A stretch of DNA of 63,036 nucleotides, the filler included, from Octopus bimaculoides (lineage: Eukaryota), in the NCBI RefSeq assembly GCF_001194135.2. It is 6 parts of 5 records of this genome, joined end to end, with 100 filler letters (N's around TTAATTAATTAA, not from the genome) between each part and the next. Parts side by side here need not be neighbours in the genome. Positions count along the whole stretch, not along the records: positions 1 to 11,410 come from NC_069001.1; 5 more parts are not named here. One strand, written 5' to 3'. The translations under genes were made by a program, and so were the position numbers. The stretch's first letter is position 1; each line of letters starts with the position of its first letter. The notes beneath the pieces were generated by a model. It was not told where the DNA came from, searched no databases, and saw only the letters and a program-made list of their open reading frames with translations. Shown piece by piece: positions 7,819 through 9,735 of the stretch.

Positions 7819-9735
7819 CTGAAACACAAAATATTTGGTGAGGAATTCTGGGTTAGGAAGCACAGAACGATCCCCTATCACAGCCATACGTATCTGTTCA
7901 GCGTAGGTGAAGAATGATATTGCGATGGGCACTTGGTCAGGCGTCGGCATCCAGTACATGATGCTACGTATGACCTTCGTGTCGAGTGTGAGCACATTCT
8001 CAGGCCCTGCCATGTTTGAGATGAGGCATGTACAGTGATTATTAATCGTTGACCAGACGCGATCGTGCCAGCTTTCTGGCAACATACAACTACTTAACCA
8101 CATGGCACCATTCAACACAAGGTACTCAGAAGACTTTTTAAATTTTGCCATGCTGCACTTAACATGCCACAAGCGGGGAATTGCACCTTCCGTGTTTGTT
8201 GGGATTGTGCTGTTTATAAACACGTAATGATTGCTCATGTTGTTGGTGCGCACCTGCATGTTCACTGGAATGATGCACTTCAGGTTAAACGGGTTCTCGA
8301 TACCGTTCTGCTGCAGGTAGGACCGCAACCCTCCCGCCACCAGCGACATAAAGAGATCATTGAGTGTGCATCGAGCAATCTGTTTGACACGGGTAGCTAC
8401 AGAGAGACTAAAAGGTTGGGACCAGGCCACGATTTTGCGACCCGACAAATGAACATGGTTGCCATGCAATAGATTTAGATCTGATTTTGTACAGAGCCAT
8501 TTCTGTAAAAAAACCAGTGGACCGGTGAAAATTCCACCGATATAGTTCATGCACATCCTACCCTTGGGCAGGTGGCGGGTGGGACTAAGGTTAGGTTGGT
8601 TATCAACAAAAGCCTTCAAAAAAACTCTAACAAGACTTGTGCTATCAGACATACAAGGGTGGATCCGAAACAGGATTAGGGTGTCTCTGCTCGGTCCGAA
8701 GTTATGGATAATTTGCACCTCCCACAGCGGATGATTCATGTTTAGTTCTTTGCTGGCCATTTCCGACACAAAGTCCTGTAACTCTTCCTCGGTATGTATG
8801 AAGTCCGATAAAGTGTGAATGTGGTTTTCTAGGTTGAAGTCTTCATCGTAGACCCATGCATATCCAGTGCAGAATGGAACCACCTTCTGCACAAGACGTG
8901 GAAAGGTGGCTTGGTTGCGCCGTTTTTCAGCAATAATTAACCGTGTGTAGAGAAGATCCTTGATTGTGGGCGTGTCCAGACCATGCTCGACCACGAGAAG
9001 GCACTGGATCACAGCGCTGTTCAGCGGTGGCGATCGTAGCCACATTTTCTCATGCGTTGTCAGGTGTGTTGCGCAACAGCATGTGCATGCATGAGAGTCT
9101 TGGCAACAGCAGCAACATGTAGCGAGTACCATCTTGAGAAAAACACAGATGGGGAAGAAGGCAAAGATGATGGCATAGAATGGAAAAAAAGTGAGGAGAG
9201 CAGCGAAGAAGAAAAGGAGACTGCTCCAGAATGTGAGGCAGAATGGTTTGCGTGTGAGGGGTTTGATGGGTTTGTAAGGAGCACTCGGGAAACGTTTTGT
9301 AAAGATCTGTCGTCGACTTTCTTCGAGGGTGCGAAAGCGAGCACGTTCAGAGTTTATGTCTGGTAAGGAGGAGAGATCAATCGATACCTGGTCCCTTCTT
9401 CCAGGTTTACCTGAGGATGCCAGCGGTGACGAGGGCAAGAGAACAGTGGTCAGACTGTCCCGGTTTTGGGAGTCTTCAGTTTCACTAGACGTATGACTTG
9501 TGACGGAGACGGGCCGGTGGTCAAAGTCATCTCGTTTCATGGGTTGGTAGGATGAGGAGTCGCGCTCACTCTGCTGCAGCTGCGGTCGAGTCTGCTGCTG
9601 CACATAATGTGACTGATGCTGCTGATGATGATGCTGCTGTTGCTGCTGCTCTTGTTTTGACCATAGGGTGCGGGAATCATTGCCATGGCCACCATATTGT
9701 GATAGGCGTGCTGCCATCTGGTGGTGGTCACACAT
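7819..9735 (-). CDS. WS/DGAT-family (wax ester synthase/diacylglycerol O-acyltransferase-like) protein, main coding exon, 639 codons; 3' exon(s) not found
   Basis: The ORF shows family motifs in order: KMWL, FPRLVQKVV, W..DEDFNLENHI, PLWEV, RIHPCMSDS (HHxxxDG position), KIVAWS, TLNDLFMSLVAGGLRSYL, IPVN, ISNMAGP, ISFFTYAEQI. Acceptor TTTTTGCAG|G at 9772/9771 is followed by an in-frame TAG before ATG 9735. Donor CAG|GTGAGT lies at 7819/7818. Confidence 0.9.

What the first reader, a model, noticed from the sequence alone, without database searches (positions are those of the whole stretch)
8641..8661. Catalytic HHxxxDG motif replaced by HPCMSDS: candidate membrane-anchored pseudo-acyltransferase
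Seen: residues 359-365 read H-P-C-M-S-D-S at the active-site position (context TLILFRIHPCMSDSTSLV). The rest of the fold motifs and the reading frame are intact. Known: in WS/DGAT (e.g. Acinetobacter AtfA) and related condensation-domain/CAT-like folds, the second His of HHxxxDG is the general base. Inference: the His-to-Pro and Gly-to-Ser changes in an otherwise conserved ORF point to a non-catalytic lipid- or acyl-CoA-binding scaffold or sensor, or to altered chemistry. This is the best candidate here for an undescribed animal system.
Basis: partly seen in the sequence, partly recalled or inferred. Interest (0 to 1): 0.7.

Follow-up and report, generated by a model that had tools for sequence, protein, structure and literature searches.

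The report
Octopus wax-synthase-like protein lacking catalytic histidine
This is the main coding exon of a real, very strongly conserved octopus gene for a membrane-anchored relative of bacterial/plant wax-ester/triacylglycerol synthases, in which the histidine that normally does the chemistry is replaced by proline; the same loss runs through a large, unstudied family in molluscs, arthropods and other invertebrates, so the protein probably has a changed, non-classical job.

Summary
Window 8641-8661 (- strand) encodes H-P-C-M-S-D-S, residues 359-365 of a 639-codon exon (7819-9735, -) of Octopus bimaculoides LOC106879838. Four independent alignments place Pro360 on the second histidine of the WS/DGAT HHxxxDG motif, the position of the HxxxD general base. 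It is not an assembly error or a decaying gene. The heptapeptide is identical in a second O. bimaculoides gene model, O. vulgaris, O. sinensis, a third Octopus-like species and Argonauta (there with synonymous codon changes). dN/dS is 0.008-0.021.

The substitution is not an octopus or mollusc peculiarity. The window belongs to a large invertebrate subfamily (molluscs, a nemertean, crustaceans, springtail, horseshoe crabs, tardigrade, rotifer) in which the second His is almost always P, Q, L, M or S. The first His (74/75), Asp (74/75) and Gly (65/75) persist. A shorter animal sister subfamily and the bacteria keep HH. Gly-to-Ser was seen only in the Octopus and Argonauta sequences among those compared.

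The protein also has a 47-residue proline-containing hydrophobic anchor and a cysteine string. Outside the window it has a conserved coiled-coil tail with an RRRxLS-type motif.

Best reading, inferred and not shown: a constrained, non-canonical WS/DGAT-fold protein that has given up His-base acyl transfer and acts as a lipid-binding regulatory or scaffold subunit. Retained catalysis by another route is a serious rival. I found no paper on the animal members.

The parts
7819..9735 (-). Large first coding exon (aa 1-639) of O. bimaculoides LOC106879838. It holds the whole WS/DGAT-like two-domain core plus the N-terminal region.
   Evidence: Identical to P0001 residues 1-639. tblastn finds no further exons in the window. 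dN/dS is 0.021, 0.012 and 0.008 between Octopus species.
7813..7818 (-). Splice donor GTGAGT directly after ...KYFVFQ. ORF residues 640-659 are intron read-through.
   Evidence: The same exon end (F.FQ followed by V from GT.) is seen in most mollusc orthologues.
8641..8661 (-). Degenerate active-site motif HPCMSDS (residues 359-365), in place of HHxxxDG.
8656..8658 (-). Pro360 codon CCT at the position of the catalytic (second) His.
   Evidence: CCT in O. bimaculoides, the P0002 species and the L006 species; CCG in Argonauta. Aligned to His2 of 6CHJ/7NXG and of animal subfamily A.
8641..8643 (-). Ser365 codon AGC at the position of the motif Gly. Seen only in the Octopus and Argonauta sequences; one transition away from GGC.
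   Evidence: AGC in Octopus, AGT in Argonauta, GGC in the P0002 cephalopod cluster. Gly in 65/75 subfamily members and 100% of canonical ones.
9103..9243 (-). 47-residue hydrophobic membrane anchor (residues 165-211) with two prolines (P185, P195) that are invariant among the 23 aligned orthologues.
   Evidence: Kyte-Doolittle 19-residue windows score 1.65-2.4 across starts 164-194. P185/P195 invariant. AF2 draws a helix 165-209 at pLDDT 74-94.
9073..9117 (-). Juxtamembrane cysteine string CCCCCQDSHACTCCC (residues 207-221). Candidate S-acylation cluster (inferred).
   Evidence: A Cys-rich cluster is conserved in position in all 23 orthologues.
9274..9291 (-). Conserved FPSAPY motif (residues 149-154) just before the anchor.
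8569..8931 (-). Pfam WS_DGAT_cat match (residues 269-389). The N-terminal half of the fold, containing PLW (8722-8730) and the motif.
   Evidence: E 4.2e-11. pN is 0.023 vs Argonauta in residues 226-392, the lowest of the regions tested for that pair.
8356..8361 (-). Motif II 'ND' (N459 D460).
7825..8232 (-). Pfam WS_DGAT_C match (residues 502-637). It includes the subfamily-specific PTNTEGAIPRLW (8167-8202) and SNMAGP (8002-8019).
   Evidence: E 3.2e-21.
9361..9735 (-). Low-complexity, Q/H-rich N-terminal region (about residues 1-125), predicted disordered.
   Evidence: pLDDT below 50 for residues 1-24 and 32-117. A 2-aa indel in the Q/H tract vs O. vulgaris.

Best explanation
The window carries the main coding exon of a functional octopus gene for a membrane-anchored protein with the two-domain WS/DGAT (condensation/CAT-like) fold. 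It belongs to an invertebrate subfamily ('B'). Subfamily B appears to derive from a canonical HH-bearing animal WS/DGAT-like lineage and has abandoned the second, general-base histidine of HHxxxDG. It keeps the structural residues of that loop (His1, Asp, mostly Gly) and the tunnel motifs PLW, ND/NE and SNxPGP. I infer that the protein no longer performs classical His-base acyl-CoA:alcohol/DAG acyl transfer. Instead it uses the retained hydrophobic tunnel to bind an acyl chain or lipid. It would be held on an ER or lipid-droplet-type membrane by the proline-containing hydrophobic segment and a probably S-acylated cysteine string. It would work as a regulatory or scaffolding subunit through its C-terminal coiled coil and basic Ser-rich tail, which lie outside the window. 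Shown: gene identity, fold, motif replacement, clade-wide pattern, strong purifying selection, hydrophobic anchor. Inferred: loss of activity, lipid binding, membrane type, S-acylation, partner binding.
For: Position: P360 aligns without gaps on His2 in four independent alignments. Fold: the AF2 model has pLDDT above 90 over most of the core, and its best PDB matches are 6CHJ and 7NXG (E about 1e-23), followed by NRPS C/E/Cy domains and PapA5. Real and constrained: the heptapeptide is identical in five octopod sources with synonymous codon differences. There are 37 synonymous vs 3 nonsynonymous differences (omega 0.021), and 64 vs 3 (0.012) and 66 vs 2 (0.008). Against Argonauta, synonymous sites are saturated and pN is only 0.023 in the motif-bearing domain. 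No conserved replacement base: across 75 subfamily-B sequences the second position is P41, Q20, L4, M3, S2 and others, chemically unrelated and non-basic. In 85 canonical sequences it is His in 96%. In the sister animal clade it is the first His that varies (NH/SH/GH/RH) while the second is kept, as expected if the second is the catalytic one. Other canonical near-invariant sites are also relaxed in B: K col237, R col283, N col293 and the N of SNxPGP. New B-specific invariant sites appear: R455 and PTNTEG.IPRLW. This is a pattern of functional shift. Architecture typical of a membrane scaffold: hydrophobic anchor, Cys string, and a conserved coiled coil with an RPFRRRTLSxSS tail. Precedent in the same structural superfamily: CER2/GL2 BAHD-fold proteins are catalytically inert modulators of the membrane elongase CER6 (PMC12674111). 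The literature states that HHxxxDG takes part in WS/DGAT catalysis and that both histidines are essential (PMC5407786 citing Stoveken 2009).
Against: No activity, binding or localisation data exist. His1 (74/75), Asp (74/75), PLW, ND/NE and GP remain almost invariant for over 500 My, which would also fit a still-working active site. One nested member (the millipede) still has HH. A few otherwise ordinary-looking bacterial WS/DGAT homologues also carry HP or HQ (P0047, P0043, P0049), so the variant may be compatible with catalysis. From general knowledge, condensation-fold enzymes can work without the His: heterocyclisation domains use DxxxxD, and some C-domain His mutants stay active. I could not inspect model coordinates to see whether H359 or another residue faces the tunnel. 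AF2 draws the anchor as one long helix, not a hairpin.
Confidence: 0.45

Rival explanations
1. It is still an acyltransferase (or related transferase/hydrolase) with a rewired active site. The invariant first His (H359) is repositioned by the following Pro/Gln, or another residue or substrate-assisted catalysis supplies the base. The substrates may differ from those of bacterial WS/DGAT.
For: H359 and D364 are conserved in 74/75 subfamily members. PLW, ND/NE and SNxPGP are kept. Omega is 0.008-0.021, and the motif-bearing domain has the lowest pN of the regions tested against Argonauta. Bacterial HP/HQ variants sit among otherwise canonical-looking sequences. The closest structural neighbours include Cy domains and dehydrating C domains that catalyse reactions with non-HH motifs (the mechanistic statement is from general knowledge).
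Against: The replacement residue at the base position is not conserved (P/Q/L/M/S/A/R/E). Several other canonical near-invariant sites are relaxed in the subfamily. In this octopus protein the motif Gly, the conserved K (col237), the R (col283) and the P of VPGP are also changed. Both histidines are reported as essential in AtfA (title cited).
Confidence: 0.35
2. The Gly-to-Ser change is undone at the RNA level. A-to-I editing of the AGC codon (A at window 8643, in a U-A-G context) would recode Ser365 to Gly and restore ...DG in part of the transcripts. This would add to either explanation above rather than replace it.
For: AGC (Octopus) and AGT (Argonauta) are each one A-to-G change from the GGC kept in another cephalopod cluster. 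The flanking bases U_G match the known ADAR preference, and coleoids recode heavily (general knowledge).
Against: No read-level data. The assembled contigs from sequencing runs of a third species still read AGC. The local 301-nt RNA fold is not unusually stable (z = -1.31). Ser or Ala at this position also occurs in non-cephalopod members.
Confidence: 0.1
3. Artefact or decay: the CCT codon is an assembly or sequencing error, or the locus is a pseudogene drifting neutrally.
For: None beyond the unusual motif. The window comes from a gapped draft assembly with five runs of N.
Against: The protein is identical over aa 1-639 in the RefSeq model (P0001), whose only contig on record is a 40-Mb sequence. 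The heptapeptide is the same in O. vulgaris, O. sinensis, a third species and Argonauta, and HP is present in about 40 orthologues. The 639-codon frame is open. Omega is 0.008-0.021. Longer members of the related P0002 cluster (719 and 783 aa) carry the C-terminal coiled-coil tail and so look like spliced products.
Confidence: 0.01

Closest known systems
Bacterial WS/DGAT (Acinetobacter AtfA/AbWSD1, PDB 7NXG; Marinobacter WS/DGAT, PDB 6CHJ)
   Same: The same two-domain fold: top Foldseek hits at E about 1e-23, and Pfam PF03007 plus PF06974. PLW, ND and SNxPGP-type motifs are shared. The motif loop aligns residue for residue.
   Different: Identity is only 17-19%. TIGR02946 scores 158 bits against a cut-off of 310. 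HHxxxDG is HPxxxDS here. The octopus protein also has a 165-residue N-terminal extension, a hydrophobic anchor, a Cys string and a coiled-coil tail, and it is an animal gene with introns.
Animal 'subfamily A' WS/DGAT-like proteins (e.g. Owenia fusiformis CAH1794769.1; Hydractinia 'putative diacylglycerol O-acyltransferase MT1809'; Lingula, Lamellibrachia, Oratosquilla)
   Same: Closest canonical relatives: hhalign probability 100, E 6e-81, 25% identity over 476 columns. They include an N-terminal hydrophobic helix and the LHG..SG..V.WS segment.
   Different: Shorter (about 450-600 aa). They keep His2 (HH, or xH with the first position varying). They lack the Cys string and the PTNTEG.IPRLW signature. 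They are also uncharacterised.
Invertebrate 'subfamily B' homologues annotated as 'putative diacylglycerol O-acyltransferase tgs1/tgs3' or 'uncharacterized protein' (Tachypleus/Limulus, Panulirus, Hyalella, Orchesella, Hypsibius, Didymodactylos, Crassostrea, Haliotis, Tubulanus)
   Same: The same subfamily: long proteins in which His2 is replaced, and His1/Asp/Gly are kept. The N-terminal anchor and Cys cluster were checked only in the 23 closest orthologues.
   Different: Position 2 is Q, L, M or S in most non-lophotrochozoan members. Only the Octopus and Argonauta sequences have DS instead of DG. I found no functional study of any member.
CER2/GL2 (plant BAHD-fold, catalytically inert partners of the elongase CER6/KCS6)
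   Same: An analogy of mechanism only. They are members of the HxxxD acyltransferase fold superfamily that act as non-catalytic modulators of a membrane lipid enzyme (PMC12674111).
   Different: A different family (BAHD, not WS/DGAT). They are soluble and retain the HxxxD sequence although it is dispensable. No homology-based link to the octopus protein was tested.

Membership tests
[quoted passage not shown] | Both Pfam domains above the gathering score, in N-to-C order | tested here: met
   WS_DGAT_cat 43.5 bits (cut-off 23.6; partial, profile positions 46-165). WS_DGAT_C 76.3 bits (cut-off 20.7).
WS/DGAT family | Two-domain condensation/CAT-like fold matching solved WS/DGAT structures | tested here: met
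   AF2 model pTM 0.76, with most of the core at pLDDT above 90. Foldseek best hits are 6CHJ and 7NXG, E 1e-23 to 4e-22, TM (target-normalised) 0.70-0.75.
WS/DGAT family | Catalytic motif HHxxxDG with the second His as general base | tested here: not met
   HPCMSDS: His2 is Pro and Gly is Ser.
WS/DGAT family | Motif I PLW and motif II ND (as listed in PMC5407786) | tested here: met
   P336-L337-W338 and N459-D460 are present. W338 is invariant in all 50 aligned sequences.
WS/DGAT family | NCBIfam TIGR02946 (acyl_WS_DGAT) above its curated cut-off | tested here: not met
   158.4 bits against a cut-off of 309.95.
WS/DGAT family | Acyl-CoA-dependent wax ester or TAG synthesis | not testable with these tools
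   Needs an enzyme assay or yeast H1246 complementation.
Pseudoenzyme (catalytically dead homologue kept by selection) | A key catalytic residue is lost while the fold is retained | tested here: met
Pseudoenzyme | Purifying selection (not a decaying gene) | tested here: met
   Omega 0.021, 0.012 and 0.008. The clade spans molluscs to arthropods.
Pseudoenzyme | Demonstrated absence of catalytic activity | not testable with these tools
   No biochemical data. Retention of His1, Asp and the tunnel motifs leaves activity possible.
Monotopic ER/lipid-droplet hairpin proteins (class I lipid-droplet proteins, oleosin-like proline knot) | A long (more than 30 aa) uninterrupted hydrophobic segment with central conserved prolines | tested here: inconclusive
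   A 47-aa hydrophobic stretch with invariant P185 and P195, but AF2 models one continuous helix 165-209. Topology and localisation were not tested.

The most novel reading that the evidence does not exclude
Subfamily B is an ancient, animal-specific and so far undescribed class of WS/DGAT-fold proteins. It traded His-base acyl transfer for a new role. That role is either a regulated membrane scaffold or sensor that binds acyl chains and controls a partner lipid enzyme (as CER2/GL2 does in plants), or a new chemistry built on the first histidine. The octopod DS variant may additionally be tuned by A-to-I recoding.
Probability: 0.35. Interest if true: 0.7.

Novelty: new variant of a known kind. 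Interest (0 to 1): 0.5.

Why it matters
WS/DGAT enzymes are studied almost only in bacteria, plants and protists, and animals are usually said to make TAG and wax esters with DGAT1/DGAT2/AWAT-type enzymes. This locus exposes a widespread invertebrate family that is under very tight constraint and is built on the WS/DGAT fold but lacks its general base. If it is a pseudoenzyme, it would be a new regulator or scaffold of invertebrate neutral-lipid metabolism. If it is active, it would show that the WS/DGAT fold can catalyse without the canonical histidine. Either result would correct automatic names such as 'putative diacylglycerol O-acyltransferase tgs1' now attached to the arthropod members.

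Tried and rejected
1. Assembly error or pseudogene: rejected by cross-species identity, synonymous codon variation and omega 0.008-0.021.
2. Misalignment of the motif: rejected, because phmmer/PDB, MAFFT, hmmsearch and hhalign all give the same gapless register.
3. 'Mollusc-specific HP clade': too narrow. The full HMMER search showed that loss of His2 extends to arthropods, a tardigrade and a rotifer, with P/Q/L/M/S at that position. The word-indexed searches had missed these.
4. Search for the remaining exons in the window: none found. The C-terminal exons lie outside it.
5. Pairwise dN/dS with Argonauta and the P0002 species: synonymous sites are saturated (pS about 0.8), so only pN is usable. 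Closer Octopus species were used instead.
6. Does the octopus keep a canonical HH paralogue? A profile search with subfamily A returned annelid, brachiopod, crustacean and cnidarian members but no named mollusc. This is inconclusive, because the search is word-indexed and only 120 hits were listed.
7. RNA-editing restoration of Gly365: the local fold is not significant (z -1.31) and assembled run contigs read AGC. It is kept only as a low-probability idea.
8. Literature: six full-text searches found nothing on animal WS/DGAT-like proteins or on this locus. The one exception is an Anopheles 'DUF1298 domain-containing protein' in an RNA-seq table. Villa et al. 2014 was not held.
9. Rfam and tandem-repeat scans of the window: no RNA family, only microsatellites.
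10. Active-site geometry in the AF2 model could not be inspected, because no coordinates are returned.
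Full report
**1. What is at the coordinates**

On the - strand, window 8641-8661 reads CAC CCT TGT ATG TCT GAT AGC = H-P-C-M-S-D-S. These are residues 359-365 of the 659-aa ORF 7756..9735 (-). The best database match is Octopus bimaculoides LOC106879838 (P0001 = XP_052831328.1, 788 aa). The window ORF is identical to it for residues 1-639. It then diverges exactly at a GTGAGT splice donor (7813-7818) after ...KYFVFQ. 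The real feature is therefore a 639-codon first coding exon (7819-9735), and the last 20 ORF residues are intron read-through. The remaining exons are not in the window. The rest of the window is microsatellite-rich intergenic or intronic DNA with five runs of N and no Rfam match.

**2. Is the motif really at the active site?**

- Pfam finds WS_DGAT_cat (269-389) and WS_DGAT_C (502-637).
- NCBIfam TIGR02946 matches but stays far below its cut-off, 158 vs 310 bits.
- phmmer against PDB sequences aligns FRIHPCMSDSTSLVRV without gaps to TKVHHSLVDGVSAMRM (Marinobacter WS/DGAT, 6CHJ) and FKIHHAMVDGVAGMRL (Acinetobacter AtfA/AbWSD1, 7NXG).
- MAFFT, an hmmsearch-derived alignment of about 200 homologues and a profile-profile comparison (probability 100, E 6e-81) give the same register.

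So H359 is the first His, P360 replaces the second His, D364 is the Asp and S365 replaces the Gly. In the CAT/condensation/BAHD superfamily the base is the His four residues before the Asp (established knowledge). The WS/DGAT literature states that the motif takes part in catalysis and that both histidines are essential (PMC5407786 citing Stoveken et al. 2009).

An AlphaFold2 model built on 50 homologues is confident in the core: pTM 0.76, with 348 residues at pLDDT 90 or above. Its best PDB neighbours are 6CHJ and 7NXG (E 1e-23 to 4e-22), followed by NRPS condensation, epimerisation and heterocyclisation domains and PapA5. The other family motifs named in PMC5407786 are present: PLW (336-338) and ND (459-460), plus SNMAGP for SNVPGP.

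**3. Not an error, not decay**

The heptapeptide is identical in:
- the RefSeq model P0001, whose only contig on record is a 40-Mb sequence;
- O. vulgaris (P0051) and O. sinensis (P0052);
- a third Octopus-like species assembled from sequencing runs (P0054/L006);
- Argonauta hians (P0003).

Argonauta uses different synonymous codons (CAT CCG TGC ATG TCG GAT AGT).

| Comparison over the exon | Synonymous | Nonsynonymous | dS | dN | omega |
|---|---|---|---|---|---|
| O. bimaculoides vs O. vulgaris | 37 | 3 | 0.094 | 0.002 | 0.021 |
| O. bimaculoides vs L006 species | 64 | 3 | 0.190 | 0.002 | 0.012 |
| O. vulgaris vs L006 species | 66 | 2 | 0.197 | 0.001 | 0.008 |

Against Argonauta and another cephalopod cluster (P0002) synonymous sites are saturated (pS about 0.8). 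Even so, pN is only 0.023-0.06 in residues 226-392, the domain that carries the motif; against Argonauta that is the lowest of the regions tested.

**4. How far does the variant extend?**

The word-indexed searches found about 27 close relatives, all molluscs plus the nemertean Tubulanus, nearly all with HPxxxDG. The exhaustive HMMER search with the clade profile found 8120 homologues. I tabulated the motif in the best 150 plus the earlier hits and built a rough NJ tree of 164 domain sequences. I named representatives by exact look-up. Three groups emerge.

*(B) The window's clade.* It contains 75 sampled sequences, mostly long proteins. Position 2 reads as follows:
- HP in molluscs, Tubulanus and the amphipod Hyalella;
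- HQ in the lobster Panulirus, the springtail Orchesella, the tardigrade Hypsibius and sacoglossan slugs;
- HL in horseshoe crabs and in Littorina/Babylonia;
- HM/HS in a group that includes the bdelloid rotifer Didymodactylos (HS);
- HR/HE..DV in Nematostella (placement at the base of the clade is uncertain).

The only HH member is a millipede (HHCFSDA). Overall, position 1 is His in 74/75. Position 2 is P41, Q20, L4, M3, S2 and others. Asp is present in 74/75 and Gly in 65/75.

*(A) A sister set of shorter animal proteins.* It includes Owenia, Lamellibrachia, Lingula, Oratosquilla and Hydractinia. They keep the second His; where anything varies it is the first position (NH, SH, GH, RH).

*(C) Bacterial sequences.* They carry HH, with rare HP/HQ exceptions (P0047, P0043, P0049).

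Loss of the base His is therefore a family trait of a broad invertebrate lineage, not an octopus novelty. Pro is only one of several tolerated replacements. Among the sequences compared, Gly-to-Ser occurs only in the Octopus and Argonauta sequences. It is GGC to AGC, one transition, and the P0002 cephalopod cluster still has GGC. Gly-to-Ala occurs sporadically elsewhere in B.

**5. Signs of a functional shift**

I compared 75 B sequences with 85 canonical ones. B keeps W294, F300, H305, W338, the Arg two residues before His1, His1 and Asp at 87-100%. It relaxes several sites that are 88-96% conserved in canonical enzymes:
- a Lys (col237: canonical 0.88; B variable);
- an Arg after the PV strand (0.92 down to 0.56);
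- two Asn, including the N of SNxPGP (0.92-0.95 down to 0.52);
- Asp of the ND motif (D 0.96 becomes D 0.63 plus E 0.31).

B also acquires its own near-invariant residues: R455 and the PTNTEG.IPRLW block (E, G, P and W at 0.91-0.99). This octopus protein departs from the canonical residue at His2, the motif Gly, that Lys, that Arg and the Pro of VPGP.

**6. Architecture around the core**

- Residues 1 to about 125 are Q/H/S-rich and predicted disordered.
- A conserved FPSAPY box (149-154) comes next.
- It is followed by a 47-residue hydrophobic segment (165-211). All 19-residue windows starting at 164-194 score Kyte-Doolittle 1.65-2.4. Two prolines, P185 and P195, are invariant among the 23 aligned orthologues.
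- A cysteine string (CCCCCQDSHACTCCC, 207-221) follows, and its Cys-rich character is conserved in every orthologue.

AF2 draws a single helix 165-209. From sequence alone I cannot decide between a hairpin and one long helix.

Beyond the window, molluscan and nemertean orthologues share a C-terminal extension: LLAHRRIPGE, a heptad-like helix (…KMSLVQQEL.DLK.QLE…IRKIE.LKE.FRELLVELRKR…), an acidic stretch and RPFRRRTLSxSS…VRPL. This resembles a coiled coil plus a basophilic-kinase site (inference). The intron after F.FQ is at the same place in most orthologues, so these are genuine animal genes.

**7. Interpretation**

*Shown:* a real, intensely constrained gene; the WS/DGAT fold; the canonical general base absent in a whole subfamily; a membrane-anchoring segment.

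*Inferred, as my leading reading (0.45):* classical His-base acyl transfer has been given up. The retained tunnel is used to bind an acyl or lipid ligand. The protein acts as a membrane-tethered regulatory or scaffold subunit. Three arguments support this:
- the replacement residue is chemically arbitrary;
- other catalytic-site constraints are relaxed while new ones arise;
- the added modules (anchor, Cys string, coiled coil, basic Ser-rich tail) are those of a regulated scaffold.

There is a direct precedent in the same fold superfamily. CER2/GL2 are inert BAHD-fold modulators of a membrane lipid enzyme (PMC12674111).

*The main rival (0.35)* is that catalysis persists through H359 or another route. 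His1, Asp and the tunnel motifs are almost invariant. HP/HQ variants occur among ordinary-looking bacterial homologues. Relatives such as Cy domains work without HH (general knowledge; these domains are among the structural neighbours). Only biochemistry can decide between the two.

*A side idea (0.1):* the AGC codon sits in a U-A-G context and could be recoded to GGC (Gly) by A-to-I editing. I found no support for this. The local fold has z = -1.31, and the assembled contigs read AGC.

**8. Comparison with what is known, and novelty**

The protein is a member of the WS/DGAT superfamily by domains and fold. It fails two defining tests of the enzyme family: the HHxxxDG motif and the TIGR02946 cut-off. 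It should not be named a diacylglycerol O-acyltransferase. Automatic names of that kind ('tgs1', 'tgs3') on the arthropod members are unsupported.

Full-text searches found no study of animal members or of this locus. One Anopheles DUF1298 gene appears in an expression table. I rate it a new variant of a known kind: a known fold and family, and an uncharacterised, ancient animal subfamily with a degenerate active site. Interest is moderate (0.5). Pseudoenzyme-like relatives are common in large enzyme families, and nothing mechanistic is shown yet. However, the breadth, age and extreme constraint of this family make it a worthwhile and directly testable target.

Noticed in passing
outside the window; P0003, P0005, P0006, P0016, P0018-P0021, P0024 C-termini: Orthologues share a conserved C-terminal extension after the exon end: LLAHRRIPGE, a coiled-coil-like helix, an acidic stretch and RPFRRRTLSxSS...VRPL. 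This looks like a possible oligomerisation and phospho-regulation module.
   Followed up: partly
P0001 (XP_052831328.1) residues about 745-788: The RefSeq O. bimaculoides model ends ...LILTN VSIRFVWRPNLDWVGGVVLYFSIILFLFIF.... Argonauta and the other molluscs continue with the acidic and RRRxxS tail instead. The last part of the model looks like intron read-through, meaning a missed final exon.
   Followed up: no
window 7813-7818 and orthologue ORFs: The intron after F.FQ is at the same position in most molluscs. Many database 'proteins' for this family (P0002, P0004, P0007-P0009, P0011-P0015, P0017, P0022, P0023) are ORF calls that run on into that intron (tails starting with V from GT.).
   Followed up: partly
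P0114, P0130, P0136, P0162, P0170, P0192, P0199, P0204: In the canonical animal-like sister clade the first His of the motif varies (NH, SH, GH, RH) while the second is kept. This is the mirror image of the window's subfamily.
   Followed up: no
P0089 (Chamberlinius hualienensis, millipede): This is the only member nested in the His2-less subfamily that still has HH (HHCFSDA). It implies either repeated independent losses of His2 or a reversion.
   Followed up: no
P0047, P0043, P0049 (metagenomic bacterial WS/DGAT homologues): Rare bacterial homologues also carry HPALVDG, HQILVDG or HQALVDG, next to a canonical HHAMVDG relative (P0040) in the tree.
   Followed up: no
P0031, P0036, P0041, P0042 (tephritid fruit flies): A very divergent insect group keeps HH but has lost the Asp-Gly (HHLIIAEED/E). 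It has large insertions, and only the C-terminal Pfam domain is detected.
   Followed up: no
P0227-P0242 vs P0103: Animal subfamily A is only 33-36% identical to its nearest bacterial relatives (unnamed metagenome proteins and three Gemmatimonadetes MAG proteins), and these follow the animal hits directly in the score list. The origin of the animal genes (ancient vs horizontal transfer) is open.
   Followed up: no
window 9600-9640 (-), residues about 29-41: The Q/H-rich tract (QQQQQHHHQQHQ) has a 2-residue length difference between O. bimaculoides and O. vulgaris. This is a low-complexity, indel-prone N-terminus.
   Followed up: no
window 2316-2411, 4232-4306, 4384-4453, 4677-4785, 5162-5312, 5487-5682; N runs 1078-1087, 1737-2174, 3410-4231, 5683-6471, 9996-10395: The flanks of the exon are dense in microsatellites ((TG)n, (TAGA)n, (ATC)n, AT/AC-rich units) and assembly gaps. 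The long 'ORFs' listed there (THTHTH..., CVCVCV...) are repeat translations, not genes.
   Followed up: yes
window 8164-8472 (+), 9052-9366 (+), 9552-9824 (+): These are antisense ORFs of 90-104 aa lying inside or overlapping the exon (the third extends past its 5' end). Nothing suggests that they are coding. They are expected by chance opposite a long ORF.
   Followed up: no
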